64,000 nucleotides of DNA from Rebecca billardiae RCC1528 (GCA_965240325.2 OZ251222.1:3286001-3350000), one strand, 5' to 3'. Positions 1,661 to 43,645 are shown, counted from the stretch's first letter. Numbers and translations: made by a program. The notes: generated by a model not told the origin, from the sequence alone.

Positions 1661-1987
1661 AACAGTCAAGTGAGTGATGAGGACTGAGGAGTCCGGTCGG
1701 ACTCGGACCCGCCCTAGCCTAATTTAGTATTCGTGATGATGATCATCATCTCATAGTTACGTGATCGTGATGCATCGTCCGACGACTAGGCCGTGACGAC
1801 AGCGCTTATTGCGCTGAAATATCGTCGCCGTGTACGACTGTGCGCGTAGCCGTAGGCCGCCGGTCACCGACACCGCTGCGGCCATGTCACAGATGAGATA
1901 ATAGACGAGATGTCGTCTATCGATTCGTCATCAGCCTGCGCCCACTGGCTTGCCGTACAGGTCCTTGGTCTTGGTCAGCGTGTTAAC

Positions 1988-4070
1988 CTAAGGTGCACGA
2001 CCGGGCGGCGCGGCGCGCGTGATGGATATTGTAAGCGGGCAGAGCTTTAGCTTGGCGCGCCGAGCACAGCGCGGCGCAGGCCGAGGCGGCCATCGCAGTC
2101 GACGGTGACGCCCGGGGCGCACGCAGCGAGTCAGAGTGCACACCTGCATGTGCGGCCACATAATGAGCCCATCGGTCTTCGCGCATGCGTCGCTCTCCTT
2201 GGGGGTGCACGAGTAGCACTGGCGGTGCTGCTCGCCAGCGATCTCGTTGAACGTCTGGCCTTGGAATTTCTCCTGGTCACCCTCGTAGACCTTGTCCATT
2301 CCGGCACACGCGGTCAAGCAGCCATCGCCGGACTCGGCTGTGACGCCGGCGCAGTTCAGGCAGTCGAAGCGCTGCTGGAACTTCATCATCACTCGCTGGG
2401 CGTACTGGAGCACCTCCTTCTGCGAGCCATCTGCCGCCTGCACCTTCGAGATCCACAGGTGATTCTCAAAGTCGCTGTTGGCTGCCTGGGCCTGGATGAA
2501 CTGCGCAGGCAGACATCCATCAAGGCCCACATACGGACGGTAGTAGGGATAAATAGCAGCGCCGAGGGAAGGGCAGTGAGTGGCGCGTGAGCCCGGCGCA
2601 CGCATGGGGTGATGGATCGAGCGGACCAATTGAACACATGCGCAGTAGTGGCAGGCTCGGAAGCGCAGCCGGGAGCGGTGCACACGCCGGAGTCTGTGAG
2701 AGCTGCTCTGCTTTGAGCACGACGTGCGCCGAGCCGAGCACTGACTCGAACTGCTCCGCCTCGCTCACCAGGAATGGGTTCATCGTGAGGTAGGTAGGGT
2801 TCTCGGCCGTGCTATCCTCGTCGCGCACGCCTGCGGAGGCGGGGCCCCAGTCCTGGTCTGCGGTGGTGTACGAGTCTGCCGGGAAGCACGCCTGTGGCAC
2901 CGGCGTCACGTCCAGGTTTGCGCCGCGCAGGCTCTTCAGCAGCTCTTCCTTGGCGCCCGACCCGGAGCTTGAGTTGAAGGTCCCCTGAGCTGCCATCGTC
3001 ACGCCGTGCGGCACGACGCCCATGCGCGAGACCATCCAGTCCGAACCACCGCCGGAGGCGGGCACGGCGTTGTACATGTACATCCCCACCTCCTCGTGCA
3101 GCAGCCCACCCTCTTCGCCGTCTTCGTCCGTCGGCGACGTCTGGTACACCTGCAGCTTGTACCTGACGCCGTAGAGGAACTGGTCCATTTGGCAGCCGGG
3201 CGAGATTCCGTTGGCCCCCTCGTACCCGCGGTTGCGCACGGCGCCGAGCACCGGCTCGAAGGTGATCTCCTCGCGGTACGTCTGGTTCTTGATCGAGTGA
3301 AAGGTCGCGCTCGGCTGGCCTGGGATGAGCGCAATCTCCTCCTTCAAGAAGGTGCCCTCGTCAGCAGCGGTCGGCCTGGTGATGGGCAGTGCATGTGCAG
3401 CGCGCGTGCCAGAGGAGGTGGGCGTGGGCGGGCGCTGTGAGCGCGCGGTGGGCGGGGGGCATGCACCGCATGCGGCACGCAGCGGCAGCGGCGCGCACGA
3501 GTAGGCTGGCACGGCAGTGTAGACCTTGCCAGCGGAGCCCTCCCACGTGCCCAGCAGGTGGCCGAGCGGGCCAAAGCAGGCGTGCAGGTCGGCGCTCTCC
3601 TCGTCGCCCGAGAGCATCGGCTCGTCCTTGCCGAACACGTTCACCTTGCACTGCCGCTTGCCCGGCTCAAGCTCAGCCATGCCCACCTCGACACACGCCT
3701 TCTGCGGGCCGGTGCCATCCTTCAGCCAGTCGTACTTGTTGCAAAATGCGTCATACAGGGCCTGGCGCTCGACGAGCAGGTCGCCCTGTGGCGAGCCTAC
3801 CGCAGTCGCGTCGCGCGTGCACTTGGGCTGCCAGCCTGATGGCTGCGAGATGAGCGGCGGGTGGTTGGCCGGGAGTGCGCCAGTGATCGCGTCGAGCGGG
3901 AGGGCTGACTTCTCCGGCAGGGCGTGATGCGCAGACGGCGCCGCTGCGAGCCGACTAGCAGCCACGAGAAGCGCCACTCCAGCCAGCCCAAGCGCGACCG
4001 CCGATGCCGCCACGCGCACGAGGGCGATGCGGCTCGCTGGCGTCGCCGCGCGGGCGGGGTGCATCATCAT
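1988..4070 (-). CDS. Membrane-anchored/secreted heme-binding beta-barrel protein, FMP-type peroxidase / nitrobindin-like (3 exons; 3' end uncertain)
   Basis: N-terminal hydrophobic anchor. Motifs FGPLGHLLGTWEG, YREEITF, VRNRG, LYGVRY, LLHEEVG, RMGVVPHG, LQYAQRV and WPHMQVCTL occur in the order I recall for bacterial FMP-type heme proteins. Introns 3376-3498 (GT-AG) and 2501-2687 (GC-AG; joins SQTP|FIQAQA). Confidence 0.72.
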
Positions 4071-4116
4071 CGCGGCCGGCCGTGTTCACGAGCTCACAGC
4101 GACGCCCGCGATACTC

Positions 4117-4441
4117 AATCTCGCTGCAGACCTGATGAGCTGTGGTCCCTCACGGTACTTTGTTCTAAGTAAACTGTATTCATAGTTTATGACGGTTCGA
4201 AGCTTTCTACCCCTGCCCCGCCTCGGGCCTCTCAGGAAACACTGCCGTACCCATGAATGACTTAATACAGGGAATTTAGTCATTTTTCCCCTTTATAACG
4301 GGCTCCGGGTAGGGAAGTCGTTTTTCTCCCTTGACTAATTATATGATTTAAAGACACAGGCACTATCATACATTCATGTTTCCTACAGTTTACTTAAGAA
4401 TAAGAGACGCACCAGCCGCCACAGCTCAGGCAGGCGAGATT
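4117..4441. repeat. Imperfect inverted repeat (arms 4117-4178 and 4384-4441) in the divergent intergenic region; MITE-like
   Basis: Left arm AATCTCGC..TGAGCTGTGG..TTCTAAGTAAACTGTA matches the reverse complement of TACAGTTTACTTAAGAA..CCACAGCTCA..GCGAGATT. Confidence 0.7.
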
Positions 4442-4704
4442 ACCTGTGTCGTCAAATCATAGAATGAGTCGACAGCAAACCTGCCATTCATAACGTTTCA
4501 AAGGTGTTTTTTTAAATTATTATTATGAAAGACTCATTTTGGGAGAAGTGTTCGCGAGCCGCGCTGGCGCCGCGGGATCATCCCAAGCGACGACCGGCCG
4601 CCGAGCTCGGCGCGGCTTGCGGCAAATTTCGGTCGTCGGCACGGAGTCGACCACTACCCACGCCGGACGGGCGCGAGCGCGAGACGCCTTTCGATTCGGG
4701 CCGC

Positions 4705-7190
4705 ATGCTCCTCGTCGCCAAGCGCGCCCTACTCAGCCGCGCGGCAGCGCTGGTGCTGACGGGGGCAGCCGTGCTGTGTGCCATCGCGCTCGTCTCGACG
4801 GCTCGAGGCGCGCTCGCGAGCGACTCGGCATTGAACGGCGATGATGACGCCGCGGGCGACGGCGATGCGCCGCCCAGCGCACTCAAGGCCGGCTTGTTCA
4901 CGTGCGCCGCGGGCGCGACGGCGGACGATGCCCTTGGGATCGACTATGCCTGCAACGACCTCCGGTACGCCTCGCCCTCCACCTATCTCCACTCCTACGC
5001 GGCCGGCGGCGCCGATCCACAGTACGACCTCCTGATCGTGGGCGCTGGCGTGCAGGCGGCGTACCTCGTTGACAACCTACGCGACGCGCTGGGCAAGGTG
5101 GCATTCAACAAGCTGCGCATCGGCATCTTCGAGGCCGAGCGCATGACCGGCGGCCGGCTCATGTCCGCCTGGGGCGGTGGTGACCTCAGCTACACCTCGC
5201 AGCTCCGCTCGCCCGGCGACACCGTGCCCATGGAGTACGGCGGCATGCGAATCGATCCCAAGACGCACTTCCTCGCGTTCGATGCGCTGCGCAAGACGGC
5301 GAAGTGGCACGATCCGGACGCCAAGTGCGAGCGCAACAACGACGTCAACCCCGGCACCATCCTCAAGGCGGACGGCTCGGACCAGGCGGGCGTGTCCGTC
5401 CTCATGGATGCCCTCAAGGCCCTCTATGGCGGCGAGGGCGTCTACACGGGGCTCGGGCAGACTGCTGACTGCCCGGGGTACCTCACGCACATGAACACGG
5501 CGGTGATGCGCTACTTCACCAACGGCTCGAAGGCTGAGTTCGGGGACTACCTCCGCTCGTCCACCCTCTTCGACGATGGCTCTGTCGAGGCGGGCTGCCT
5601 CGACCTGATCGGCCACACAAACACACTCTTCGAGGCCAACAGGGAGAAGATGCTCAACGAGTCGAAGAGCTTCGTCGAGCTGGTGAACAACGCGTGCACG
5701 TTCGCATGCAAGCAGACCGACACGTACGCCGACTTTTGCACGCTGTGCGCCAAGTTCCCGCCGGGCAGGCAGGGCCAGAACCTCGTCTCTTGCATTGGGT
5801 ATGACGACCTTCCGGGCGTATCGCCCGCAGTCGGCATCGACGAGGCGGCAGCGGTGACCGGCCGCGGCGACTACTCGTGCACCCCAGCGACCTCGCCGGG
5901 GTGCTCGTATCTCTACCTCTTCAACCACGGAATGCAGACCTTTGCGCAGGAGCTGCTCGCCGGCAAGCCAAACACGGGCTTCAACCCAGTCGGCGTGGTG
6001 CGCGCCAACCCTGCTCTCTTCACGGCGCACGCGCGTGCGCGTGCGTGCGCGCCGCGCCACCTGCCCAGCCGGCACGGCCGGCCGGTGATTAGTGCGCGCT
6101 CCGACGAGCGGGCGTGTGGCGTGGCCCCGGCGTGCGCGACGTGCGCAATGCGTCCCGCAGATCTTCGAGAAGCGCCTGAAGGGTGTCAAGTACGACGGCG
6201 CCGACGCCAAACCGCTCGCCGCCGCCCTCACCGGCAAGCACAAGGTCAAGGAGTGGGCCTCGCCCGTTGCGCACACGGACGCCCCAGCTGCGCCCAAGAC
6301 GCTCACGCTGGACTTTGAAGACGGCTCGAGCGTGAGTGCGAAGGCGGCGTACCTCACGATGGTCCCCGACGACCTCACCAAGATCGACACTTTCTCGCCC
6401 TGGGCCCCACTCAGCGAGAAGGCCTTCATGAAATTCGGCGCGGACAAGCTCTTCATGCACTGGGCGGACGGGTTGCCCCAGAAGCTCAAGGAGTCGACCG
6501 GCGACCCAGACAAGCCGGACGATCGCAAGCGGCTGGTGCTCGACGGCGACCGCCCGGGCTGGGTGTCGCGTCAGGTGTTCCAGTGGGACAACCGCACCAT
6601 CCTCGTCTACGGTACCGCGCCCGAAGACCCCACACTGCCGGTCAATGTGATGCAGCAGATCATTCAGGCACGCGCGGCGCGCCCGCGCCCGCCGGCGCAC
6701 GCGCGAGCGCATCAACCCGTGTGCAGCGGGTGATCCGCCGCGCCAGGGAGCTGCTCTCGATCGGCACACGCGCTGACTCACCTCGCCCGCCCTGCATCTG
6801 CCCCCCTACGCTGCATCGTTCCGCGCCAAGCAGACCAAGGGGATGAATACCGCGATCCAGACGGTCGTGGACGAGCTCAACGTGGCCCACGGCGTGACCG
6901 AGGACAGCGCAGACGGCATCCCGATGCCGTCGTGGGCGCGCGTGAAGGGCTGGCCGGGCGGCACGTTGTCCTACTACAAGGAGGACTGTGGCGAGCTCAA
7001 TGTCGACCCGTTCGCCTTCTCCTCGCGCTTCGAACGCCCCCTGGGCGAGGATGTGCCGCTCTTCTACGGCTCGTCCGAAATGAATGCGCATGGCGGCTCT
7101 GGCTGGGTGGAGGGCTCTCTCGAGGAAGTCGTGCTCAACTTCCAGCCCATCAAGGCGATGCTGAGCGACATCGCGGCGGGCAGGGCGTGA
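4705..7190 (+). CDS. Membrane-anchored FAD-dependent amine / L-amino-acid oxidase (achacin/aplysianin-like LAAO), 3 exons
   Basis: Signal anchor; Rossmann motif LLIVGAGVQA; GG motif FEAERMTGGRLMS; MEYGGMRI; C-terminal GWVEGSLE. Introns 5998-6160 (GT-AG) and 6668-6833 (GC-AG) restore the frame. Confidence 0.82.
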
Positions 7191-14534: not shown

Positions 14535-15635
14535 ATGGCCGCCGCGCGACGACACCTGATCGTGCAGAGCGCGGGAGGCGTGCTGGGCTACGTGCACGCG
14601 CGTGAAGAGTACTACGCCTTCCGCTTGATTCGTGCGAACGACTCCGTTCCACTCCGTGAGGCCGAACTCGACGTCAGCGACGAGCTCGCCGCGGTGCTCG
14701 CCGGCAGCGAGGCGCTCGTCGCACAGCGGCTCGCACAGTCGCAGTCTGCGGAGGCGTTCGCAGTCGAGCTCGCTGCGATCATCGAGCAGCTACCGAGCGC
14801 CCCTTCGCTCTCAACCCTACCTTCGGAGACGTACTACACGAGCCTGATCTCTCAGCTCGACGAAATGGGCTGGGATGCGCTCGCCAGCCTGAACGACAGC
14901 CTGAGCGTTGTTGAGCTCACGCTGCAGGACGCGGCAGGGCGTGCGCATGCGCTCACACTCGAGCTGCCTTTCAACTTCCCGCGCAGCCCGCCGTCCGTGC
15001 GATGCCAGCTTCCCGCGGACTTCGAGGTCACCTGGCCCGCCTCGGCGAAGAGCGCGCGCTCGTACGACCTCAGCACGGTGCTGTCGCAGTTCCGCGCGCA
15101 GCTGAGCGCGTACCAGGAGCTGTGGGACGTGCTCGACGACCTTGACGCGCACACGGCGGTGCTCGAGCCGAGCGCGCCGACGCGGGACCAGTGCGCCCGC
15201 CGCGTCGCGCTCGGCCGGCACAGCTCCCTACAGCTCAGGCTCAACCCGAGCAGTGCGCGTGCGCTCCCAGAGCTCTTCTTCTTCGGCTCAGAGACGGTGG
15301 TCGCACCGCTGCGCGCGAGGCTCAACGAGCGGCTGGGCGTGTGGGACGCGGCGCGGAGCGTGCGCGAGAACCTGGAGCTCGTGCTCGAGCTTGAGTTCCC
15401 GCGGCCGAGCGCGGCGAACGCCGAGGAGTTCAGCGTCGAGTGCGGCGTGTGCTACACGTACAAGCTCGAAGACACCATCCCGGAGTGCGCGTGTGACGGG
15501 TGCAACCAGGTGTTCCACCATGGCTGCCTGCTCGAGTGGCTGCAGGCGCTGCCAAACTCGAAGTCATCCTTCAACTCCGTCTTCGGCACTTGCCCGTACT
15601 GCTCCAAGCCGATGTCTATCAAAGCGCATCAATGA
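14535..15635 (+). CDS. FANCL: E3 ubiquitin ligase FANCL
   Basis: RWD/UBC-like region (LWDVLDDLDAHTAVLEP, RRVALG) and FANCL RING ECGVCY..C..C..FHHGCLLEWL..SKSSFNSVFGTCPYCSKP. Confidence 0.93.
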   Translation: MAAARRHLIVQSAGGVLGYVHAREEYYAFRLIRANDSVPLREAELDVSDELAAVLAGSEALVAQRLAQSQSAEAFAVELAAIIEQLPSAPSLSTLPSETYYTSLISQLDEMGWDALASLNDSLSVVELTLQDAAGRAHALTLELPFNFPRSPPSVRCQLPADFEVTWPASAKSARSYDLSTVLSQFRAQLSAYQELWDVLDDLDAHTAVLEPSAPTRDQCARRVALGRHSSLQLRLNPSSARALPELFFFGSETVVAPLRARLNERLGVWDAARSVRENLELVLELEFPRPSAANAEEFSVECGVCYTYKLEDTIPECACDGCNQVFHHGCLLEWLQALPNSKSSFNSVFGTCPYCSKPMSIKAHQ

Positions 15636-17864: not shown

Positions 17865-18027
17865 CGCGTCGTGTGCTGCGCCTCGGTAGCGGACGTGGAG
17901 GTGCGCGGCACGGCACGCACGCAGAGACAGCCTCGCAAGCGGCCGCTCCTCTGCTCGTCCCTCGCAAGCGGCCCGGGCGGGCGGCCCCCGGACGTCGAAC
18001 GAAGTCGAATGCCGAGCGCGGAGCGCC

Positions 18028-18056
18028 GGCCGTTTCAAAATCTAAAACGGCCGTTG
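18028..18056. promoter_or_regulatory. Putative G2/M cis-element cluster (MSA AACGG x3 plus CHR TTTGAA) upstream of CDC20
   Basis: GGCCGTTTCAAAATCTAAAACGGCCGTTG contains CCGTT (18030), TTCAAA (18034), AACGG (18046) and CCGTT (18051). Confidence 0.5.
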
Positions 18057-18173
18057 CCCCAGAGGAGGCCAGGACATGAAACGCACGGCCCGAACGACGA
18101 CGCTCGCTCACTCGTGAGAGACCCACCCCGCTACCACACGCAAAGCCCTTCACTCCGGAGCACGACGACAACC

Positions 18174-19622
18174 ATGGCCACTGAGGCAAACTCGACCAGC
18201 AACCGGCGCATGCGCGACCTGTGCGAGCTTGACGACCTCCTCCGTCTGGACTCCACCCCTAAACGCACCACCACAACGGCCTCGCGCACACCGTCGTCAC
18301 GCGGCGGCGCGCTGCGGCCAAGCAAGCTCGACGTCGACAAGCCGTGCGGCGACCGCTTCATCCCGAACCGCGGCGCGTTCGACATGGCCGTCAGCCAGTT
18401 TGAGATCGCTCGGCGAGGAGACGCCGAGAACGCCAACCTCGACTACAACGCCTCCCCGGCGAAGGAGGAGTACAAGCGCGAGCTCGCGTCCACGCTCTAC
18501 CAGGGCGCGCCCGGCGCGAACAAGGTGCTCGCGTTCAAGTCGAAGGCGCCCAAGCCGGCGGAGGGGCATCAGAACTCGCTGCGCGTACTCTACTCGCAAA
18601 ATAAGGACGCGATGAACATGCCCAAGCGCTACGCGCGCAACATCCCGCAGGCGCCTGAGCGCATCCTGGACGCGCCCGACCTGATCGACGACTACTACCT
18701 CAACCTGCTCGACTGGAACGCGTCCAACGTCGTGGCGATCGCGCTGGGCGACTCGGTGTACCTGTGGAACGCAACGGACGGCTCGATCCAGCAGCTGCTG
18801 CAGACGCCCGGCGACGGCTCGCACGTCACCTCCGTCAGCTGGATCCAGGACGGCAGCCACATCGCCATCGGCACCTCGCGCAACACGACGCAGCTGTGGG
18901 ACACGGACAAGCTCAAGAAGGTCCGGGAGATGGACGGGCACCAGTCGAGGGTCGGCGCGCTGTCGTGGAACCAGCACGTGCTCTCGTCGGGAGGACGTGA
19001 CGGCTTGATCGTGCACCACGACGTGCGCGTGCAGAACCACATCTCTGCGACGCTCGCCGGGCACACTCAGGAGGTGTGCGGGCTCAAGTGGTCGCCGCAC
19101 GGCAACCAGATCGCGTCCGGCGGCAACGACAACCTGCTCAACATCTGGGACGACCGGATGTCGAGCACGCCGACATTCTCGCTGACGAACCACACGGCCG
19201 CCGTCAAGGCGCTCGCGTGGGCCCCGTGGCAGAAGAACCTCCTCGCGTCGGGCGGCGGCACGGCCGACCGGATGATCCGGTTCTGGAACACGCAGACGGG
19301 CGCGTGCCTCAACGCGGTCGACACGCACTCGCAGGTCTGCGCGCTGCAGTGGTCGAAGCACGACAAGGAGCTCGTGTCGTCGCACGGGTTCTCTCACAAC
19401 CAGCTGATCTTGTGGAAGTACCCGTCGATGGTTAAGGTGGCCGAGCTCACGGGCCACACCGCGCGCGTGCTGCACATGGCGCAGTCGCCCGACGGCACGA
19501 CGGTCGCTTCGGCAGGCGCGGACGAGACGTTGCGCTTCTGGAAGATCCTCTCCGGAGGGGACAACAAGAAGGAGATCGCGAGCTCAAACGATGGGCTGAT
19601 GAAGATGAAGAGCATTCGGTGA
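18174..19622 (+). CDS. CDC20: APC/C co-activator CDC20/Fizzy (intronless)
   Basis: C-box DRFIPNR, ILDAPDLIDDYYLNLLDW, WD40 repeats, C-terminal IR tail. Confidence 0.96.
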   Translation: MATEANSTSNRRMRDLCELDDLLRLDSTPKRTTTTASRTPSSRGGALRPSKLDVDKPCGDRFIPNRGAFDMAVSQFEIARRGDAENANLDYNASPAKEEYKRELASTLYQGAPGANKVLAFKSKAPKPAEGHQNSLRVLYSQNKDAMNMPKRYARNIPQAPERILDAPDLIDDYYLNLLDWNASNVVAIALGDSVYLWNATDGSIQQLLQTPGDGSHVTSVSWIQDGSHIAIGTSRNTTQLWDTDKLKKVREMDGHQSRVGALSWNQHVLSSGGRDGLIVHHDVRVQNHISATLAGHTQEVCGLKWSPHGNQIASGGNDNLLNIWDDRMSSTPTFSLTNHTAAVKALAWAPWQKNLLASGGGTADRMIRFWNTQTGACLNAVDTHSQVCALQWSKHDKELVSSHGFSHNQLILWKYPSMVKVAELTGHTARVLHMAQSPDGTTVASAGADETLRFWKILSGGDNKKEIASSNDGLMKMKSIR

Positions 19623-29128: not shown

Positions 29129-32100
29129 ATGCTTCTGGAGGGCATGCTGGGCTCCGTGGGCAGGACAGACCGCAGCTCTTCCGTCAGCGTCGACGGCCGG
29201 GACGTGCGCGTTGCGGCAGGCGCGCCCAAGCGCCGTACTTCAATACTCGCGCCACCAATACTTAGGGGTGGCTCGCGGAGGGCAACCCTGGCGCCGTCCA
29301 TGGTTCGGCGCAATACCGTGAAGCACAACCCAGAGATGGCGATTCAGGTCCTCAAGGCCATGGGCGCTGACGACGACGCACGAGTCATGCGTCGCACGCT
29401 GCAGCGCCGCATCCGCACCGGCGTGACCAAGATCTCGTGCGAGATGCAGGACACGGTGATCGCCGTGGACATCTCGCCCGACGGCCAGTACTTTGTTGCC
29501 GCGGGCAATAGCCGAGAGGCTGTGGTGTACAACGCCATGAATGGCGAGGAGGTGGTACGCGCACGTGCACGCGCGCGCGGACCCGGGGGTGCGTTGTGCC
29601 CTTGCTGATCGGTGCTGCCGCGCTGCACCACACGTGCGTGGCTGCGGTGGCCACGCCTGCGTGACGGCGGCATCCACGCGCCCTCCATGCGGGCGCGACG
29701 TGCAGTGCCGCATCAAGGTCACGATGGCCATCACGAGCGTCAAGTTCACCCACGGCCCGCGCACGTCGGACGCGGAGTCGGACGATGGCGTCCCGCGCCG
29801 GCTGGGCCCGCTGAGCGCGAGTCGCGAGCCGGGTGGCACGCAGGAGCAGCCGGGCGAGGCGGGGGCGTGGACCGCGATACCGCAGAGGGTGTGGACGGGC
29901 ATCGTCCCGCACCGCCAGCCAAGCGGCGGAAACTCTGCGAGCATCGCGCACGGCGGCAAGGCGAGCTCACGTGGCGCTGCCGGCGCCATCGGAGCCGGCG
30001 GCGAGCAGGCGCGCTCGCTCAAGCTGCTGATCGGCACGTACGCGGCGGGCGAGAAGCCCAACGTGCTGCTGGTCGACGTGATGAGTCAGGTGCGGCTGAG
30101 CGACGCCCTCTTCGGCCGCGACGAGCAGCGCTGGAACGTGCAGACCTCCGCTGTGACCACCAACGGCAGCCTGTACGCGGTGGGCGGCGACTCGCAGCAC
30201 GTGCTGCTGTACAGAATCAAGCTGGCGCCCAGCGCGCGCGCGCGCGCGGCGGAGCTGCAGGCGGGCGGCGGCGAGCCGCTGCACGAGGGCGCGCTGCAGA
30301 TGGCGCCGGCCGGCGAGGTGCGCTACCCGAGCCACGTGACGGCCGTCTCGATGAACGCGGCGGGCACGCTGCTCGGCATCGCCGGCGACGCGCAGCGCGT
30401 GCAGCTGTGGACGCTTGTCGACCAAGGGGCCAGCGGGGCCGTGCACGCGCGGATGGGGTACCAGTTCAACTGCCACACGGCGATCTACGGGCTGGACATC
30501 TCGGCGAACGGCTTCTCGGTCGCGGCGGGCACGAACAAGCGCACGGAGGTCTGGCGCGTGCGGTACGAGCTGCCGTCGGAGGTGGACACGAACCTGAAGG
30601 CGGCGGCGCACGCGGCCGGGCAGCCGGCCGTGCGCAGTGCGGGCGGCGGCGGGGAGCGCTTCTCGGCCGCGCAGCTGAGGGCGCGGCTGCGGTGGAAGGG
30701 CGCGCGGCGAACCTTCTCCGACCAGTCGCAGAGCGACCTGCAGCTCCCGGGCTCGGTGGTCTCGCTCGGCATGGCCGCGCGCTCGACGGGCGGCGAGCTC
30801 GATCTGAACTCGCTCTCGATCGAGCGGATCGCGGGCCGGCGCTTCAACAGCAGCGCCTCGCTGGGCGGCGGCCAGGAGGCCGACGCCGCCGACCTCAAGC
30901 GGAGCGCGGCGGAGGAGCTGACGCGCCGGCTGTCCAACACCGCGAGCAGAGCCACGCAGGACGCCGACGGCTCGGCGGCGGCGGGAGGCGGTGAGCTCGG
31001 GCTGGGCGAGGCCGGGCAGCTGATGCACGAGCAGCTGTCTGTGCTGCTCGGGAATGGGCGGAGCAGCAGCGCGCGCCGTCGCGCCGCGGCGCAGCACCCG
31101 GCGATCCACTGCGAGCCGGTGCAGGTGTTCGAGCAGCCCGCGCCGCAGGGCGGCGTCTCCTTCTCGCGCGACGCGTCGCGGCTCGCGATCGCGGGCGACC
31201 AGCTCGTGACGCTGCACGACGTGCAGTCCGGCTCGACGCTGCGCTCGTTCAAGCAGGGCGGCCGCGTGCGCTGCGTCGCCGTCTCCGCGCTCGGCACGGA
31301 GGTGGTGAGCGGCGGCTTCGACAAGCGGGCGTCGCTCGTCGCGGCGGACGCGGGCGCGGAGCTACTCGAGGCGCGGGGCGTCATCGACGTGGTGCGCTCG
31401 GTGCACGTGCTGGGCGAGCTCTTCGCCATCGGCGGCTCGACGCGGCAGGGCGGGCTCGCGCAGCTCTTCACGACCGCGGACGGCTTCAAGACGCCGCTGT
31501 GCGAGTGGCGCCGCGCCAAGGAGGTGCGCTGCGTGCACCTCACGCGGGGGAAGGCGCTGCTGGCGATCGCCGGGCACGACTGCATCGTGCAGCTCGTGTG
31601 CACCGTCACCTTTGCCACGCTCTGCGAGCTCAACTACACGGGGCGCGGCGGTGTGCCCCACTTTGTCTGGAGCGTCGACATCTCGACCGACGTGCGCGTG
31701 ATGGCGGTTGGCTGCTGGTCGTCCAAGGTGCACGTGTACCTGCTGGGCAACGTGCCGGAGGCGCCGACGCCCGAGCCAGTGAGGTCCTCGCTCGTCTCCT
31801 CGCTCCTCGGCCAGCGCGCGGCCGGCGCGGGCAGCGCGGTCACCACCGTGCTCAGGCAGCGCGTCGTCCGGCCGACCGAGGTTGCCGTGCTCAGCCGCGG
31901 CGACCGCGTCTACTCCGTCTCGCTCGACGGCGAGGGCTCGAAGCTGCTCGTGGGCGGGCGCGACAAGACGGCGGCGATGTACGACCTGAGCGAGACGATC
32001 GGCAAGAGCCGCCGCGAGCCGCGGCTGCTGTGGGAGGAGCGCGTGGACGAGTTCATCTACACGGTCTCGATGTCGCGCGACTGGTCGGTGTGCGCGTTTG

Positions 32101-35040
32101 GCGGCATGGGCAAGTCGGTCAAGGTGATGACGGCGCACTCGCACCAGCTGCTGTTCGAGGTGCCCGTGGCGGGCACGGTGCACGCCGTCTCCGTGCAGGA
32201 GGACGGGCAGCACATCGCCCTCTCGGGCGAGCTGCCGCACATCACCGTGTACGACCGGCGCGGCGTGGAGAAGCTGTGCATCCCGATGGGCGACGACGCG
32301 TTCTGCGTCTCGCTCACGGCCGCGTGCCTCGCGTACACGTCGCACCGGCACGCGGTGCTGTTCGGCCGCTCGGGCCACGCGTTCGGCTGGCAGGACCAGC
32401 CGTCGTGGACGATGGCGACGAAGATCATCCGCTCGTCCACCGAGGAGAACCTGCTCCGCTTCCTCTCGCGCGTGCTCGACGCCAACCCGTCGCTCGTCAA
32501 CTCACGCTCGAGCGCGGACGGCGGCTCGTTCCTCAAGTTCATCGTCGAGATCTCGCGCGACGCGGACATCCTCGACCTGGTGCTCAACGCGTCGACCTCG
32601 ATCGGGCTGCTGCCGGACGGGCAGCTGACGACCGCGCTGCACATGGCGGTGGAGAACGGCAACCGCACCGCGATGCGCCGCATCCTCCGCGGCTTCCTCT
32701 CGGGGCGGCTCGCGCGCATGCCGGGCTCGATGCGCCAAGTCTTCTCGTGCTTTGAGCTGATCGCGAAGCGCTACCCGCACGACTTTGTCGACTTCATCTC
32801 GGCGGTCGAGCTCGAGCCCGAGCCGGAGGTGCTCGACCTGCAGGACTCGACGGACGTGGTGCTGCCCGCGATGGTCGTGAAGGGCTCGCCGTACCGCTAC
32901 CCGAAGGGCATCTGGCAGAAGGTGATCGACCGTTACAAGATCTCGGACGAATCTGCCGGCCGCCAGGTGCGCGACGAGGAGCCCGAGGAGGACGGCGACG
33001 ACGAGGACGAGCCGCAGAGGAACGGCGCGCCGCCGAGGCCGCCGCCGCGCAAGAAGCCGCCCGGCGCGCCCATCGGCCAGGGCGGCATCGACGGCGATCG
33101 CGGCGGCGGCGCGAACGGCGGTGCGTCGGCGCACGGCATCACGGGCGGCGCGGGCGCGGGAGGCGGCGCGGGGGCGCCGCGCGCCGCGGAGCCGCCGCCC
33201 CAGACCGCGCGCGCAGCGCCGCTCAAGATCCGCCGCTCGACGGCGCTGCTGCGCTCGCTCGGCTCGCGCGCATTCGAGCCGCCGATCGACGAGGGCCTCG
33301 CGCTCACCAAGTCCGCCTCGTCCGGGCTGACGGCGCTGCGCGTCCCGTTCCAGAACTTTGCGGGCTTTGGGCCGTTCCGCAAGGGGCAGGTCGGCTCGAG
33401 CCCGCTGCAGCTCGTCTCGCTCGCCGCGCGCACGACGGGGGACTACTCGGTGTTCGGCGCGACGCTGGTCGAGGCGACGCTCGAGTACAAGTGGGAGACC
33501 TTCGCGCGCCGCCAGTTCTGGTTCGAGCTGGGCCTGTACCTCGTCAAGATGGCCTTCGTGTACGCGCACGTGCTCGTGGTGCTCTTCCCCTTCTCCACCA
33601 ACGGCACGGCCGAGACCGTGATCGGCCTCGGCCTCGCCGAGCTGCGGCAGCACGAGCTGTGGGCGTGGAGCGTGTCGACGTGGCTGGCGACGACGTACTT
33701 TGCGCTGATGGACGAGTGGAACGAGCTGCGCCAGCTCCTCACCGCGAACACCCTCGCTGACTACCTCGGGCTGTGGAACTTCTTCGACCAGCTGTTCATC
33801 GTGCTGCAGCTCACGGCGAACGCGCTGCTGCTGCACGCCGCGCTCACGCCAGGCGCAGAGTACATGCTCGGCGGGTTCGCGCCGCTCATGCGCATCGACG
33901 GCGCGGGCGGGCGGCTCGGGCGCGTGCTCCGCGCGGGCGGCGGCGGCGGCTCGAGCGCCGAGCTCCTCCCCTCCGACCTCGAGCCCGTGTTCCAGGACGA
34001 GGACGGGCTCGTGCGGCTGATCACGATGTGCGAGGCGATCGTCTTCCTGTGCGTGCACCTCAAGCTGCTCTACTACGCGCGCGGCTTCACCAAGCTCGGC
34101 GTGCTCGTGCGCATGATCATGCAGATCCTCATCGACATGGCGCGCGCGCGCGCGCGCGCCGCCGCGCGCTGCGCGAGGCGCGCGCGTCCACGCGCGCGCG
34201 CGCGCTGACCGCCCGCCCGCCCGCCCGCCCGCCCACGCGTGCCCGCTGCCCTTCCATCCGCGCGCCGCGCGCAGCTCTCGTTCATGTTTGTGCTGTTCGT
34301 GATCCTCGCCGGCTTCGGCTTCGCGCTGTACGTGCTGCGCCGGCACCGGTACACCGAGCTGTCCGACATCGTGGTCGCCGTGATGAGCGTGGTCGACTCC
34401 GGCCTGTACGCCGACCTCGCGCCCGAGACGTACCAGGACGCGGGCGTGGTGCAGCTCGCCGTCTTCACCACGTTCATGATCATCACGCAGATCGTGCTGC
34501 TCAACCTGCTGATCGCGATCATGTCCGACTCGTACGCCAAGGTGCGAAGCGGGCTGGGCGGTTGCGCGCCCACACGCGCGCCCTGCCGCGTCGCGTCGCG
34601 CCGCGCGCGCTCACAGCGACGCGCGCTGCGCACGCCTCGCGTCTGGGCCGATGCGTGCGCGCGCTCAGGTGCGCACCCAAGCGGAGCTCGCGTCCAAGTA
34701 CGAGAAGGCGCAGGTGGTGCTGGAGATGGAGGTGTCGCCCCCGCTGCTCGAGCGGGTGGTGTCGACGCTCTTCGGCCTCACTGACGGGGACAAGTTCCCG
34801 CGCTGGCTGCACGTCCTGATGCCCGAGGCAGACGAGGTCAGCCAGTCGGCGATCAGCGCGGGCAGCACATCCAACGGCGCCGAGCGCGCGACGGCTCCGC
34901 GCGGCGGCTGGCGCGCTGGCGTGGGGCTCGAACAGCGCCTGGATGCGCTCGAGAACAAGCTCGATACGGTCATCGACGTGCTGTCCGCGAGCGAGGCTAC
35001 CAAGCGCTCGGGCGGCATTTTCCAGCGAGCCATGGGATAG
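29129..35040 (+). CDS. TRP-like cation channel with large N-terminal WD40 region and ankyrin-like segment, 4 exons
   Basis: Many WD40-like strands ([21 protein letters not shown]); TALHMAV; LEYKWETF; S6 motif [16 protein letters not shown]. Introns 29555-29705 (GT), 34140-34274 (GC), 34542-34668 (GT). Confidence 0.82.
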
Positions 35041-35236
35041 CCGCTTGCGAGCTGGCTGCCGCCATCGCTCCAGATCGATCGATCTTATTATTTCGGCAGC
35101 GGCACAATACAGTATTCGAGGTCTGAAACGGCCGGACAAAACGGTGTATCGCTTCGCAGCCATCTCGCGCCCCATTGGTCCGTCGCGGGGCCGCAGTGGG
35201 ACAGCGGCGACTCCGACGACGGCGCCGACGCCCGGG

Positions 35237-36211
35237 ATGCTCCGCCGCGCGGCTGCAACGTACCGAGCGGCGGCTGCCCGCGCCACGTTGGGCGCCGTTC
35301 GCCCAGCCGCCACTGCTGCCACGATCCCGGGCGCGAAGTACGTCGAGGGCTTCACCGACTCGTACGCGCCGCTCTTCCAGCTTGCAGACGACAAGACGAC
35401 CGAATGGAAGCGGCTCGACAAGGCGAGCAAGTACGTGTCCGTGGAGACGCTCAGCAACGGGAAGGAGTGCGTGCGCGTGCAGGGCGAAGCGATCAGCATG
35501 CTCACGCAGCAGGCGATCGGCGATATCTCCCACTTCTTGCGCAAGTCGCACCTTGCACAGCTGCGCCTCATCCTCGACGATCCGGAGGCGTCGCAGAACG
35601 ACCGCTTCGTCGCGCTCGAGCTCCTCAAGAACGCGAACATCGCGTCGGCTGGGATCCTCCCGGGCTGTCAGGATACGGGCACAGCGATCTGCATCGGCAA
35701 GCGCGGTGCGCGGGTTCTGACCGACGGCGACGACGACGCGCGCTTCTCGGAGGGCGTGTACGCTGCGTACACGCAGCGCAACCTGCGCTACTCGCAGGTG
35801 GCGCCGCTCGACATGTACACTGAGAAGAACACCAAGTGCAACCTGCCCGCGCAGGTCGAGCTGTACGCGGACGACGCACACCCGGACGAGTACAACATGC
35901 TCTTCATGGCGAAGGGCGGCGGCTCCGCCAACAAGACCTTCCTGTACCAGCAGACGAAGGCGTTGCTCAACCCGTCCTCACTCATGGCCTTCCTCGACGA
36001 GAAGATCAAGACGATCGGCACGTCGGCGTGCCCGCCGTACCACCTGGCGATTGTGATCGGCGGGCTGTCGGCGGAGCTCACGCTCAAGACGGTCAAGCTC
36101 GCCTCGGCGCGCTACTACGACGACCTCCCCACCTCGGGCGACGAGAGCGGCCGCGCGTTCCGAGACGTTGGCCTCGAGGGGGAGGTGCTCAAGCTCACGC
36201 GCGAGATGGGG

Positions 36212-36264
<53 letters not shown>

Positions 36265-36982
36265 GCTGCCGAGGCACGGTGCGTCGTGCCCGGTCGGGCT
36301 GGGCGTCTCCTGCTCGGCCGACCGGCAGGCGAAGGCCAAGATCACGCGCGACGGCGTGTTCATCGAGCAGCTGTGCGAAGACGTGTCGCCCTTCCTGCCC
36401 GAGGTGACGCAGGAGGACGTCTCCGCTGAGGTCGTCAGCGTCGACCTGAACCAGCCGATGGACCAGATTCGCAGCCAGCTCGCGCAGCACCCGATCCGCA
36501 CGCGCCTCTCGCTCTCAGGCACGCTCGTCGTCGCGCGCGACATCGCGCACGCCAAGCTGCTCGAGCGGCTGCAGAGCGGCGCCGGGCTGCCTGACTACGT
36601 CAAGGACCACATCATCTACTACGCCGGCCCGGCCAAGACGCCCGACGGCTACGCGTCCGGCTCGTTCGGCCCGACGACCGCCGGGCGCATGGACGCGTAC
36701 GTCGACACGTTCATGCAGCACGGCGGCTCGTTCATCTCGCTCGCCAAGGGCAACCGCTCCAAGGCGGTGACCAAGGCGTGCAAGAAGTACGGCGGCTTCT
36801 ACCTTGGCTCGATCGGCGGGCCGGCCGCCATCCTCGCACAGAACTGCATCAAGAAGGTCGAGGTGCTGGACAACGAGGAGGATGGGATGGAGGCGGTGTG
36901 GAGGATCGAGGTCGAGAACTTCCCCGCTTTCATCGTCTGTGACGACAAAGGCAACGACTTCTTCGCAAAGTGGATGGGTTGA
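35237..36982 (+). CDS. Class I (Fe-S) fumarate hydratase, mitochondrial
   Basis: [42 protein letters not shown]; Arg/Ala-rich presequence [10 protein letters not shown]. Confidence 0.95.
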
Positions 36983-37274: not shown

Positions 37275-40200
37275 TCACGCCGTGAGCGCGCTTGCCTGCT
37301 GCTGGATCACGGCGAGGAGCACGCTCTCCGCCTTCACGACAGCGTGGCCCTGCTTCTTGAACGTGGCAGACGCAGCCTGCGCGGGGCGCACATCGCAACC
37401 AGCAGTTTGGGGCACGCGTCAGCCCGTCTATTGGGAGGAGGCTTGGCTGGCACTCAGATGGAGTGCGGTGGGGTGCATGGCGCGAGCACTTGTGCGCGTA
37501 GTGGGCGGCCTCGACCCGACGCGTTCTGAGCGCGCACCTTGTCCGCGGGGCATGAGACGACGAAATAGCGCACGTGGTCGTCATCCGAGGGTGCGGGCGG
37601 GAGGCGGGTGGTCACCTTGCCGCCGGAGGCCTCGATGATCAGCCCGAGGTCGTCCGGCTTGGGCATGATCGACTTGGTGAGCAGAAACGTGCAGCCGCGC
37701 AGGCACGGCTCAGCGGCCGCCCGGCCCAGCGACGCCTGCGCGTTGAACGACCACTTGGACGACGCCCCGCGCGCTGAGCTGAAAGTGCCGCTGAGCTCGA
37801 ACGGCGCCTCTGCGACAAAGCCGTGTGCGCGCGCGCTCGCGTCCAGCCACGCGGCGTCGACGAGGTGGCGTGCGCGCTGCGCGGGCGCACACGCGCGCGG
37901 CGAGCGCCGGGGGCAAGGGGCACGTCATGATACACGCCGCGCGTCGCGCACGTGGCTGAGCAGGGCGCGCAGCGTGCACGGCGCACAGACAGGGGTGCGC
38001 GCACACGTCACGCGCACGCGCGAGTGAGCGCGCGCGCGCGCGTGCCGAGACAGCAATGCACAGCTTGACGGTGCGCTTCACGGTGGTGCGGTCGACGACG
38101 CAGTGCGTGCAGCTCGGCGCCTCCGCCGCGCTCTCGAGCACCTTGCCGCCGCACTCCTTGACCGTCTTCTTGAGCGCCGCCTCGCGCGCCGAGTCCTCGA
38201 AGCAGGTGAAGAGCACGCGCACCTCTCCCGGCCTGTGCGGCACGACCGCTGCCGCACTGTCAGCTGCGAGCGGTGCGGCGGACGGCTGCGGCTGCGGCGC
38301 GGCGGCCGCAGCATCGGAGCGAGCACGCTTGCGCCCCGGGGTTGGCTTCGCCTTCTCCTCGCTCGCTGCCGCCGCCGCGCCATGAGCAGCGGTCGCGGCA
38401 CGCGCACCGCCGCCCTCTCCGCGCGCGCGCTTGGCAGCGGGCTCCTCGCTGGCAGCGTCGGCCGCCGGGGCCGCGGCTGCCTCGCTCTGTGTGGGCGCAT
38501 CGGCAGCGCGCGAGCCGCGCCGCTTGGACGGGCGAGCGGAGGCGGGGGGGTCGCCGCTGCCGCCGGTGTCCGGTGCGCGCGCGCTCGACGCCTTCGCGGG
38601 CGCGGCGCTTTCGGCAGCCTGCGGCGCCGAACGCGTCTTGCCGCGCGGCTGAGCCGGGCGGCCGCGCCCGCGGCGCGCTGGCGGTTCCTCCTTAGCCTCA
38701 CCCTCTTCGTCGACGTCCATCGCGGCCGGCGGCGTGGCGGGCGCAGGCGCTGCACTCGCGGGAGTCGCGCGTGGGCCACCACGCTTCGGCGCCCCCGCCG
38801 CACCGCCCGCGGCGCTGGCCGTCGGCACGGCGGCGGCGCGCCTGCCGCCGCGCACCTTGTCCGCGCGGCTCGCGGCGCGAGGCGGCGGGTCGGCGTGGGG
38901 CTCGGCAGTCGGCTCTGTGGCTGGGTCGGGCGCCTCGATGTCCGCGGGCTCGCTGGCCGGAGGTGCGCCTCGCGGCCGCGTCGAGCGCTCGTCCGCGCTA
39001 GCGCGACCTCGGCGTCGGCTGCCCGCGGGCTCCGCATCGGCCGCTGGCTCCGCGACGGCATCGGCGGCGGGCGCAGCGGCGGTGCGAGATTTAGCGCCAC
39101 GGCCGCGTGCGGGCTTGCTCGCAGCGGGCTCGGCCGCGGCGCGTGCGGCAGGTCGCGAGCGCGAGGCTCGGCCCTTGACCTCCGGCTGGGCCGGTGCGAG
39201 CTCCTCGTCGGCCGCCCCCGGAGCGGCGGTGGCGGGCTCAGCGCTTGCAGCCCGCGCGGCAACAGCCGCGGAGTCGAGCACCGCGCCTGCAGCTGCGGCG
39301 GCGGGCTGCGCGGCCGCGGCCACACTGGGCTGTGACGGCGTCTGCGTCTGCGTCCAGCTCGTGTCGATGAGCGCACCCGGGCTCGCTGCGGGCTGCGAGG
39401 CGGCGGCGACGAGCTGCTTGGTTTGCCTGCTGCGGTGTGGCACGGGGGGCGGGCGAGCCGCTCCGCGGGCGCCGCGCGAGCGCGCGCCGCGCGCTCCGGC
39501 CTCGGGGCCCGCTGGCTGCGCGCCGCTGGCCTGCTGGGCTCCAGCCCGCGCCTCAGGCGCTGCCGCTCGCGCAGCCGCGTCGGCGGCACCGTTCGCGCGA
39601 GTCGGGCTGCCCTCAGCCGCGCGCGTGGCGTGCTCGGCACCGTGGTCGTCGGCATCCGCGCCATCCGCATCGGCCTCAGGAAGCATCACCTGCGTCGGCT
39701 CGCACGCCTCAGGACCGACGGAGGATGGCTCCGCACCCACGGCCTCGGTTGCGCCCAGCGAGGGCGGCGGCACCGGTGGCTCGGTCGCGCCCGGCTCCGG
39801 CTCGGTGGCCGCGGCACCACCGCGGGGCGCCGCGACGACGGAGGGCATGGTGCCCTCCACGGGCACCGTCGTGGGCGCCGCACCCAGCTCGCCCTCACCG
39901 TACGCGGGCGAGAGGCTGTGGCCAGCGTCGAGTTCGCCGCTCGCGCCGTGCGCCTCCGTCTCAGCTGCGGCCGCTGGTCCAGCAGCATCGTCAGCGCCGC
40001 CGGGCTCGATGACCTGCGTCTCTGCAAACGCGTTCGGGTCCGGGTCCGGCGGGTCCGGCGCGTCTGTGTCCAGATCGGCGGACTCGTCGTCCGCATCGCC
40101 AGGCCCTTCCCAGACCTGCGTCGCGTCGTTGTCCACCTGCATGCCCCCGGGCGCGGCGGCGGGCTCCGTGCCGACACGCGCGGGCTCGAGAGCACCGGCT

Positions 40201-43517: not shown

Positions 43518-43645
43518 CGCGGTGCATAAGGCTCGGTATGCTCTGCCACCAACGCCGACATCGTGTCGACGATCGGGCACTGCCGCCGCGACGAATCAGG
43601 AGACCCGAGTCGTCCTACCTGTGTCGTTAAATCATAGAATGAGTA
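43518..43645 (+). repeat. Dispersed repeat copy (inverse copy at 51879-52018; fragments at 4441-4469 and about 45816-45836)
   Basis: TATGCTCTGCCACCAACGCCGAC..GATCGGGCACTGCCGCC..GAATCAGGAGACCCG..TACCTGTGTCGTYAAATCATAGAATGAGTA. Confidence 0.88.

What the first reader, a model, noticed from the sequence alone, without database searches (positions are those of the whole stretch)
1988..7190. Divergent surface oxidase + heme-protein pair: candidate H2O2-generating/handling module
Seen: a flavin LAAO/amine oxidase and an FMP-type/nitrobindin-like heme protein are head-to-head about 635 bp apart. Both have N-terminal hydrophobic anchors and Cys-rich ectodomains, which suggests the same extracytoplasmic compartment. 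Known: LAAOs release H2O2 and ammonium, cell-surface amino-acid oxidase activity has been reported in haptophytes, and FMP-type proteins are bacterial heme peroxidases. Inference: a co-regulated oxidase-peroxidase unit for organic-N scavenging with peroxide removal, or for oxidative defence. I know of no description of such a pair. Caveat: head-to-head arrangement is the norm in this window, so adjacency alone is weak evidence.
Basis: partly seen in the sequence, partly recalled or inferred. Interest (0 to 1): 0.78.

Follow-up and report, generated by a model that had tools for sequence, protein, structure and literature searches.

The report
Neighbouring secreted amino-acid-oxidase-like and heme-barrel genes
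Two intact, back-to-back algal genes encode a secreted flavin enzyme most like L-amino-acid oxidases and a secreted protein with a bacterial-type heme-binding barrel, both from small unannotated families, but nothing yet shows that they work together.

Summary
Two intron-containing genes lie head-to-head with 634 bp between their start codons. Each has one N-terminal hydrophobic segment and many conserved cysteines.

Gene B (+, 3 exons, 717 aa) belongs to a small unannotated protist family. It misses Pfam Amino_oxidase but is tied to that superfamily by profile hits and by a confident model of a homologue. Its nearest solved relatives, by sequence and by fold, are L-amino-acid oxidases. The FAD motifs and the Met-Arg that holds the substrate carboxylate are conserved.

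Gene A (-, 4 exons, 557 aa, ending at 1931 rather than 1988) carries a complete FMP-type heme-binding domain split by a Cys-rich insert. Full-length homologues match NCBIfam NF040572 at E 1e-37 to 5e-41, just under its cut-off. Matches to the FMP peroxidase model and to nitrobindin are far below cut-off.

Functional coupling is unproven:
- Three genomic contexts of distant B relatives hold no A-type gene.
- One other sequencing run holds transcript-like contigs of both families.
- No RNA run was listed for this organism.

Heme binding, peroxidase activity, H2O2 release and surface location are all inferred. The scan noted the heme gene separately before (s1-346590).

The parts
3499..4070 (-). 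Gene A exon 1. It holds the ATG at 4070, an N-terminal hydrophobic segment (4013-3957), a Cys-rich leader, and the first barrel motif GPLGHLLGTWEG (3572-3537).
   Evidence: ORF and sequence; hydrophobicity; alignment to P0006/P0007; weak nitrobindin N-terminal match.
3376..3498 (-). Gene A intron 1: 123 nt, GT-AG, phase 2. It is in frame, so the raw ORF reads through it.
   Evidence: Homologues P0006/P0007 run straight from ..PAxS to the next block; splice sites checked.
2688..3375 (-). Gene A exon 2: the core of the FMP-type heme-binding domain. Motifs are IKNQTYREE, VRNRGY, GLLHEEVG (3107-3084) and VVPHGV (3017-3000).
   Evidence: NF040572 E 5.5e-22 for this exon alone; invariant His in LLHEE and PHG across the family.
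2501..2687 (-). Gene A intron 2: 187 nt, GC-AG here. Contig L001, from another assembly of the same species, has GT at the donor.
   Evidence: SQTP|FI.. junction is gap-free against P0006/P0007. P0005 reads V where the window reads A. L001 is 99.96% identical with 1 mismatch.
2144..2500 (-). Gene A exon 3: the end of the main barrel block, a Cys-rich insert (FDCLNCAG..QHRQCYSC), and the first half of the last conserved strand, WPHMQ (2158-2144).
   Evidence: NF040572 positions 211-253 at E 1.2e-7; alignment.
1988..2143 (-). Gene A intron 3: 156 nt, GT-AG.
   Evidence: WPHMQ|VNTLTK restores the family motif WPHIQVNTLRK.
1931..1987 (-). Gene A exon 4: VNTLTK... plus the stop codon at 1933-1931.
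   Evidence: The C-terminal tails of homologues match the last positions of both FMP models.
4071..4704 (.). Shared 634-bp upstream region between the two start codons. It has 52% GC and an AT-rich core with nested inverted repeats.
4705..5994 (+). Gene B exon 1. It holds a signal/anchor segment (4741-4794), the FAD motif VGAGVQAAY (5038-5064), the GG motif TGGRLMS (5146-5166), EYGGMRIDP with the substrate-carboxylate Arg (5233-5259), and a Cys-rich helical insert.
5995..6160 (+). Gene B intron 1: 166 nt, GT-AG.
   Evidence: Junction NPVG|IFEKRL matches VGPVFNKRL of P0002.
6161..6667 (+). Gene B exon 2: part of the substrate-binding domain.
   Evidence: 41-53% identity to P0002/P0004/P0010.
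6668..6833 (+). Gene B intron 2: 166 nt, GC-AG.
   Evidence: Junction QQIIQ|TKGMN matches QHMIQSQGMG of P0002.
6834..7190 (+). Gene B exon 3: the C-terminal FAD-binding segment FYGSSE..GGSGWVEGSLEE (7062-7127), plus the stop codon at 7188-7190.
   Evidence: Aligned to GQGWVEGAL of the solved LAAOs 8jhe/8jt7; conserved in the family.

Best explanation
These are two separate, intact nuclear genes transcribed away from each other from a 634-bp spacer. Both products enter the secretory pathway through one N-terminal hydrophobic segment and are probably disulfide-rich.

Gene B is a divergent FAD enzyme with the amine-oxidase fold, nearest to L-amino-acid oxidases. It most likely holds the alpha-carboxylate of a free L-amino acid on the conserved Arg of EYGGMR and passes a hydride to FAD. 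It then releases keto acid and ammonium, and re-oxidises the flavin with O2 to give H2O2.

Gene A carries a complete FMP-type (nitrobindin-related) beta-barrel domain whose last strand is separated from the rest by a Cys-rich insert. It most likely binds heme b through one of three invariant histidines (LLHEE, PHG, WPH) and reacts with a small oxidant.

Shown: the gene structures, homology, the fold of a B homologue, motif conservation and the adjacency.
Inferred: substrate, H2O2 release, heme binding, location, and any cooperation between the two. I put cooperation at about one in five. The adjacency is more likely coincidental or loosely co-regulated.
For: Gene models agree with homologues exon by exon.

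Gene B:
- An exhaustive profile search found only 115 relatives in 1.84 billion proteins. The weaker matches (E 2e-17 to 7e-4), e.g. P0066/P0067 at E 2e-17, are true PF01593 Amino_oxidase proteins.
- With a family-only profile, all six PDB hits are LAAOs: 8jhe at 1.1e-6, arginine oxidase 8jt7/8t8a at 3e-5, L-Lys oxidase 7eii at 1.6e-3.
- The AlphaFold model of P0002 has pLDDT 79 and pTM 0.80.
- Foldseek gives VioA L-Trp oxidase at E 7e-17. VIA-align gives Z 25.3 (rmsd 2.8 A, 399 of 413 residues), HTAncLAAO2 at Z 21.8, snake LAAOs at about Z 21, and MAO/PAO/LSD1 at about Z 20.
- GxGxxA, GGRL, E[YFL]GGMR and GW.EG are conserved in every member.
- Met89-Arg90 of snake LAAO contact the flavin ring, and Arg90 holds the substrate carboxylic acid group (PMC7052187).

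Gene A:
- NF040572 heme_bind_FMP scores E 7e-37 to 5e-41 over model positions 1-253 in five homologues. The window's exons match separately.
- The C-terminal WPHIQVNTLRK matches the last positions of both FMP models.
- The nearest ESM Atlas cluster is a bacterial 'heme-binding protein' cluster with PF08768.

Secretory entry: hydrophobic N-termini here and clear signal peptides in relatives; 12 invariant Cys in B.
Against: - No family member reaches Pfam's Amino_oxidase threshold.
- LAAO-type folds also include amino-acid 2-monooxygenases, which release no H2O2.
- A scores below the curated cut-offs of NF040572 (127-141 against 150), NF040571 (at most 62 against 300) and PF08768 (at most 21 against 25).
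- The structure prediction for A failed (pLDDT 30), so no heme pocket was seen.
- The B fold is that of a 42-57% identical homologue, not of the window's spliced protein, which was not joined.
- No expression data for this organism.
Confidence: 0.6

Rival explanations
1. The two genes share a bidirectional promoter and act together at the cell surface. B makes NH4+ and H2O2 from amino acids, and A, as a peroxidase, removes or uses the H2O2.
For: - Both families are rare, unannotated, secretory and Cys-rich.
- They are divergent neighbours 634 bp apart.
- Run ERR2654253 holds transcript-like contigs of a B homologue (P0008, L017) and an A homologue (P0007, L005) with similar GC3 of 0.73 and 0.71.
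- Cell-surface amino-acid oxidases that produce H2O2 are reported for Prymnesium. Extracellular ROS is reported for the coccolithophorid Pleurochrysis (PMC6247811).
Against: - No A-type gene lies within the held flanks (about 1.3-10 kb a side) of B relatives in L008-L011, L024-L026 or L028. This was tested by tblastn at E<=10 and by a profile against the six-frame translation.
- A is not an FMP-peroxidase orthologue.
- Co-occurrence in one run may only reflect shared lineage.
- A quarter of neighbouring gene pairs are divergent by chance.
- No expression data.
Confidence: 0.2
2. B is not an H2O2-releasing LAAO. It is instead an amino-acid 2-monooxygenase/decarboxylase or an oxidase of another carboxylated amine, and so yields little or no peroxide.
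For: The LAAO/MAO fold covers such enzymes. MAO, PAO and NicA2 score only 4-5 Z units below the best LAAO match. Sequence identity to any solved enzyme is 11-17%.
Against: All PDB sequence hits of the family profile are oxidases of L-amino acids. The carboxylate-binding Arg is invariant.
Confidence: 0.2
3. A is a heme-binding protein with a non-peroxidase role. It could capture or carry heme for iron supply, or handle NO/peroxynitrite as nitrobindins do, independently of B.
For: The better-matching model is the general 'heme-binding protein' domain, not the peroxidase equivalog (141 against 62 bits). Nitrobindins bind NO and isomerise peroxynitrite (PMC6275384, PMC10094804). The N-terminal barrel half gives weak THAP4_heme-bd matches.
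Against: No direct evidence for any ligand. The nitrobindin matches are below threshold.
Confidence: 0.3
4. One or both proteins stay inside the cell (ER, vacuole, or a plastid compartment reached through the ER in an alga with a complex plastid). If so, there is no shared extracellular site.
For: Only an N-terminal signal is seen. Three close B homologues (P0004, P0008, P0009) have A-F-G at the likely signal cleavage site. From my own knowledge, this recalls the ASAFAP-type plastid import motif.
Against: The window's two proteins lack such a Phe, and B continues with an acidic stretch. Twelve invariant cysteines fit an oxidising, extracytoplasmic site.
Confidence: 0.15

Closest known systems
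Bacterial LAAO group with solved structures: HTAncLAAO2 (8jhe), Pseudomonas arginine oxidase (8jt7/8t8a), L-Lys oxidase (7eii). Also VioA L-Trp oxidase (5g3t, 5zbc).
   Same: The fold matches (Z 21.8-25.3). The N-terminal GxGxxA, GGRL and ELGGMR motifs and the C-terminal GQGWVEGAL motif are shared. These are the only PDB sequence hits of the family profile.
   Different: - Identity is 12-17%.
- Gene B is not recognised by Pfam Amino_oxidase.
- Gene B adds a signal/anchor, an N-terminal Cys-containing leader and a Cys-rich helical insert with 12 invariant Cys.
- Gene B is eukaryotic and has introns.
[quoted passage not shown]
   Same: The proposed chemistry and extracellular site are the same: NH4+ scavenging with H2O2 as by-product (PMC7412212; PMC6247811).
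   Different: LAO1 homologues are already reported in Haptophyta (PMC7412212), so they are the obvious candidates for that activity. Whether gene B's family is related to LAO1 beyond the superfamily was not tested. No member of B's family carries a functional name apart from one 98-aa fragment called 'monoamine oxidase'.
NCBIfam NF040572 'heme-binding protein' (heme_bind_FMP) and NF040571 'peroxidase, FMP-type'
   Same: Homologues cover NF040572 end to end (positions 1-253 plus 256-273) at E down to 5e-41. The C-terminal WPH strand is shared with both models.
   Different: - Scores are below both cut-offs.
- The gene A proteins are eukaryotic and about twice as long.
- They have an N-terminal anchor, a Cys-rich leader and a Cys-rich insert before the last strand.

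I read FMP as the Flavobacterium meningosepticum peroxidase of Koga et al. 1999 (cited in PMC3084812). That link is my inference.
Nitrobindin / THAP4 heme-binding beta-barrel (PF08768; At1g79260, Rv2717c)
   Same: The N-terminal PLxxLLGTWxG motif and the first half of the barrel give weak matches (E 0.04 to 4e-4).
   Different: The matches are below Pfam's cut-off, and the C-terminal half does not align. Equivalence of a proximal His could not be tested.

Membership tests
Flavin amine oxidase superfamily (Pfam PF01593) | Score above Pfam's gathering cut-off for Amino_oxidase | tested here: not met
   No PF01593 hit for the window's exons or for 13 family members. Only NAD_binding_8/9 hits near threshold.
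Flavin amine oxidase superfamily (Pfam PF01593) | Significant profile link to recognised members, and the two-domain FAD/substrate fold | tested here: met
   The profile hits PF01593 proteins at E 2e-17 to 7e-4. The model of P0002 matches VioA at Z 25.3, and LAAOs, MAO and PAO at Z 20-22. The fold was tested on a homologue, not on the window's joined protein.
L-amino-acid oxidases | FAD motifs (GxGxxG/A, GG motif, C-terminal GW.EG) plus the Met-Arg whose Arg binds the substrate carboxylate | tested here: met
   VGAGVQAAY, TGGRLMS, EYGGMRIDP and GSGWVEGSLEE are conserved in all members and aligned to 8jhe. The role of Arg90 is taken from PMC7052187. Residue equivalence rests on the HMM alignment and the motif, not on a superposition.
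L-amino-acid oxidases | O2-dependent oxidative deamination of L-amino acids with H2O2 release | not testable with these tools
   Needs an enzyme assay.
NCBIfam NF040572 heme_bind_FMP (heme-binding protein) | Whole-protein score of at least 150 bits | tested here: not met
   The five full-length homologues score 127.6-141.3 bits. The window's exons score 78.7 and 31.7 bits separately, and the joined protein was not scored.
NCBIfam NF040572 heme_bind_FMP (heme-binding protein) | Coverage of the whole domain model | tested here: met
   Positions 1-253 are covered in one stretch. Positions 234/256-273 are covered by the C-terminal tail after the Cys-rich insert.
NCBIfam NF040571 peroxidase, FMP-type (equivalog) | Whole-protein score of at least 300 bits | tested here: not met
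   36.6-61.7 bits.
Nitrobindin / THAP4_heme-bd (PF08768) | Score of at least 25 bits, and a proximal His in the last strand | tested here: not met
   Scores are 12-21 bits and cover model positions 2-94 only. An invariant His in WPHIQ lies in the last conserved strand, but its equivalence could not be tested because the model of A failed.
Conserved divergent gene pair (functional module) | Adjacency kept in relatives | tested here: not met
   No A-type gene lies in L008-L011, L024-L026 or L028, which surround distant B relatives. Close relatives are known only from contigs of 2-4 kb, so the test is incomplete.
Conserved divergent gene pair (functional module) | Co-expression | not testable with these tools
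   No RNA run was listed for this stretch. The only hint is joint presence of both families in run ERR2654253.

The most novel reading that the evidence does not exclude
Gene B's family is the unidentified gene for the cell-surface L-amino-acid oxidase activity long known in haptophytes. It works with an FMP-type heme protein as a two-part extracellular redox module of marine protists: nitrogen scavenging joined to peroxide removal or peroxide-driven chemistry. That module was acquired from bacteria or giant viruses.
Probability: 0.15. Interest if true: 0.7.

Novelty: new variant of a known kind. Interest (0 to 1): 0.45.

Why it matters
Cell-surface amino-acid oxidation lets phytoplankton use dissolved organic nitrogen and is a source of H2O2 in sea water. 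In the papers I read, the haptophyte activity is described but tied to no gene, apart from reported LAO1 homologues.

Gene B gives a concrete, testable candidate from a family that standard annotation misses: no Pfam hit, and only 115 relatives in 1.84 billion proteins. Gene A belongs to a small eukaryotic group of an otherwise bacterial-type heme-binding barrel family that is barely studied.

If the two did act together, they would form a simple extracellular oxidase and heme-protein pair. As it stands, the value lies in two new, well-defined gene models and a short list of decisive experiments.

Tried and rejected
- RNA evidence: the look-up of sequencing runs listed no RNA run.
- Structure of gene A's family: the AlphaFold model of P0007 with a 5-sequence alignment failed (pLDDT 30). 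Both fold jobs were then spent.
- Profiles of gene A's family against the PDB gave nothing at E<=10.
- Fetching bacterial FMP-type genes, to compare heme ligands and neighbours, failed three ways. tblastn against plasmids gave no match. Two scans of bacterial genomes gave no confirmed locus.
- The metagenome scan with gene B's family gave only two transcript-sized contigs with no neighbours.
- Papers: no text on 'FMP-type' proteins beyond citations of Koga 1999. Run and assembly accessions were found in no paper.
- Idea rejected: the two 166-nt introns of B are copies of one inserted element. They share no more than GC-rich composition.
- Idea rejected: B starts at ATG 4525. That stretch has no coding GC3 signal.
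- The spliced proteins were never joined. All searches used single exons by reference or natural homologues.


Full report
**What is there.** The stretch lies in GC-rich eukaryotic DNA with spliceosomal introns. Coding GC3 is about 0.88 and the spacer is 52% GC. Other notes of this scan call the organism a haptophyte, which I did not test. Two of the five introns here use GC donors. From my own knowledge this fits coccolithophore genomes.

**Gene A (minus strand).** Reading both strands and aligning to natural homologues gave the model.
- The ATG is at 4070.
- Exons are 4070-3499, 3375-2688, 2500-2144 and 1987-1934. The stop codon is at 1933-1931.
- The protein has 557 residues.
- Every junction is collinear and gap-free with P0006 and P0007 and restores family motifs. 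Examples are SQTP|FI.. and WPHMQ|VNTLTK.
- Intron 1 is in frame, which is why the raw ORF of 516 codons reads through it.

**Gene B (plus strand).**
- Exons are 4705-5994, 6161-6667 and 6834-7187. The protein has 717 residues.
- Both junctions match P0002/P0004.
- The upstream in-frame ATG at 4525 sits in sequence without coding periodicity.

**Shared protein features.** Each protein has one N-terminal hydrophobic stretch of membrane-spanning strength and no other. Most relatives of B have plain cleavable signal peptides, and some have anchors. Relatives of A likewise have signal peptides or anchors. B has 12 cysteines that are invariant in its close family. A has 14 cysteines, several of them invariant. 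Entry into the secretory pathway and a disulfide-rich, extracytoplasmic fold are therefore well founded. The final destination is not.

**Gene B: family.** Pfam does not recognise an amine oxidase in the window's exons or in any relative. It gives only borderline Rossmann-motif hits. A single-sequence PDB search found nothing. The word search found three relatives without annotation.

An exhaustive profile search of 1.84 billion representatives found 115 proteins, of which about 25 are near full length. The ten weaker matches I scanned, such as P0066/P0067 at E 2e-17, are genuine PF01593 Amino_oxidase proteins. That establishes homology with the superfamily.

A profile made only of the close family hits six PDB sequences, and all are L-amino-acid oxidases:
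- HTAncLAAO2 at E 1.1e-6
- Pseudomonas arginine oxidase at 3e-5
- L-Lys oxidase at 1.6e-3
- a Pseudoalteromonas-type enzyme at 0.41

**Gene B: fold.** A model of the homologue P0002 (42-57% identical to the window's exons) reached pLDDT 79 and pTM 0.80.
- Foldseek puts VioA L-Trp oxidase first (E 7e-17, TM 0.73 by target), followed by HTAncLAAO2 and arginine oxidase.
- The second-look aligner gives VioA Z 25.3 (rmsd 2.8 A, 399 of 413 residues), HTAncLAAO2 Z 21.8, snake-venom LAAOs about Z 21, and MAO, PAO and LSD1 about Z 20.

**Gene B: active-site motifs.** The dinucleotide motif, the GGRL motif, E[YFL]GGMR and the C-terminal GW.EG are kept in every family member and in the nearest canonical relatives. 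In snake LAAO, Met89-Arg90 contact the flavin and Arg90 holds the substrate carboxylic acid group (PMC7052187).

I conclude that B is an LAAO-like flavoenzyme. Its substrate and its H2O2 release remain inferences, because the same fold houses amino-acid 2-monooxygenases.

**Gene A: family.** NCBIfam holds two models named after 'FMP'.
- The five full-length relatives match NF040572 (heme-binding protein, domain model) at E 7e-37 to 5e-41. The scores of 127-141 bits fall just under the cut-off of 150, and the matches cover model positions 1-253.
- The window's exon 2 and exon 3 match it separately, at 5.5e-22 and 1.2e-7.
- After a Cys-rich insert, the C-terminal motif WPHIQVNTLRK matches the last 14-40 positions of both FMP models. 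The domain is therefore complete but interrupted, and in the window its last strand is split by intron 3.
- The peroxidase equivalog NF040571 scores only 37-62 bits against a cut-off of 300. This is not an orthologue of the FMP peroxidase.
- Nitrobindin (PF08768) matches stay below threshold and cover only the first half of the barrel.
- The nearest ESM Atlas cluster is a bacterial 'heme-binding protein' cluster in which a quarter of members carry PF08768.

Three histidines are invariant (LLHEE, PHG, WPH) and are candidate heme ligands. The structure prediction failed and no bacterial members could be fetched, so no pocket was examined.

I read 'FMP' as the Flavobacterium meningosepticum peroxidase of Koga et al. 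1999. That paper exists, but I could not check its link to the NCBIfam models.

**Are the two genes a unit?** Adjacency alone says little, since one neighbouring pair in four is divergent by chance. The rest of the window holds ordinary housekeeping genes: FANCL, CDC20, class I fumarase, an FHA protein and GlnRS. There is no nitrogen or redox cluster.

- *Linkage in relatives.* This could be tested only for distant B relatives that sit on long contigs: P0136/P0133 (L008-L011), P0022 (L024-L026) and P0164 (L028). None has an A-type gene within the held flanks (about 1.3-10 kb a side), by tblastn at E<=10 or by a family profile on the six-frame translation.
- *Close relatives.* Close relatives of both families are known only from contigs of 2-4 kb that look like transcripts, so their linkage is unknown.
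- *Co-occurrence.* Run ERR2654253 holds a B homologue (P0008) and an A homologue (P0007) with similar codon bias. A second A paralogue occurs in sister runs. This shows co-occurrence, and probably joint expression, in one more sample. It could equally reflect shared ancestry.
- *Expression here.* No RNA run was listed for this organism.

I put functional coupling at about 20%.

**Comparison with what is known.**
- Cell-surface amino-acid oxidases that make H2O2 are described for Prymnesium, and extracellular ROS for the coccolithophorid Pleurochrysis (PMC6247811).
- Chlamydomonas uses periplasmic LAO1 for the same purpose. LAO1 homologues are reported in haptophytes (PMC7412212).
- B's family has no named member apart from one fragment called 'monoamine oxidase'. 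Its relation to LAO1 was not tested.
- I found no paper on eukaryotic FMP-type proteins or on such a pair.

**Verdict.** The family calls are supported at superfamily or domain level. The oxidase-peroxidase module remains a hypothesis with weak support.

Exons were searched one by one by reference, and folds were made on natural homologues.

Noticed in passing
window 2686-2687 (minus strand; donor of gene A intron 2): The donor is GC in the window but GT in contig L001, which comes from another assembly of the same species. This is the only mismatch in 2821 nt, so it is a GC/GT splice-donor polymorphism.
   Followed up: partly
window 4136-4470, in the spacer between the two genes: The AT-rich core has nested inverted repeats: 35-nt arms at 4333-4367 and 4436-4470, and a perfect 13-nt pair at 4166-4178 and 4384-4396. 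The 35-nt arm sequence recurs at 43616-43644 and 51897-51917. This may be a small hairpin/MITE-like insertion that widened the spacer.
   Followed up: partly
window 5995-6160 and 6668-6833: Both introns of gene B are exactly 166 nt long but share no sequence beyond GC-rich composition.
   Followed up: yes
L015:1-18 and L017:1-29: Two B homologues from different runs have very short 5' leaders that share ATTTACTGAG just upstream of the ATG. This could be a lineage-specific start element or a leader.
   Followed up: no
model of P0002 against the ESM Atlas: Several of the nearest structural clusters are amine oxidases of giant viruses (Nucleocytoviricota; TM by target 0.72-0.90). One of these clusters has the oxidase fused to a cytochrome-b5 heme domain.
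   Followed up: no
L008:5849-7774, L009:890-2815, L011:223-2148; L024:7341-7685: The distant B relative P0136/P0133 keeps a multicopper oxidase two genes upstream, plus the same unannotated neighbours. The relative P0022 has a SOUL heme-binding gene 2.3 kb upstream.
   Followed up: no
P0004, P0008, P0009 N-termini: Three close B homologues have A-F-G at the likely signal-peptide cleavage site, which recalls the plastid-import motif of algae with complex plastids. The window's protein lacks it.
   Followed up: no
window 14535-15635, 17871-19622, 29541-34208, 34943-36982, 37710-41084, 56314-58716: The other large ORFs of the window are housekeeping genes: FANCL, CDC20/Fizzy, a WD40 protein, class I fumarate hydratase, an FHA-domain protein and the N-terminal domains of glutaminyl-tRNA synthetase.
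   Followed up: partly
P0006 (EukProt Awhi_evm1s2500): One A homologue carries a EukProt name that I read as the ichthyosporean Abeoforma whisleri. If right, this bacterial-type domain has a patchy spread across distant eukaryotes. The model stops before the last WPH strand and is probably truncated.
   Followed up: no
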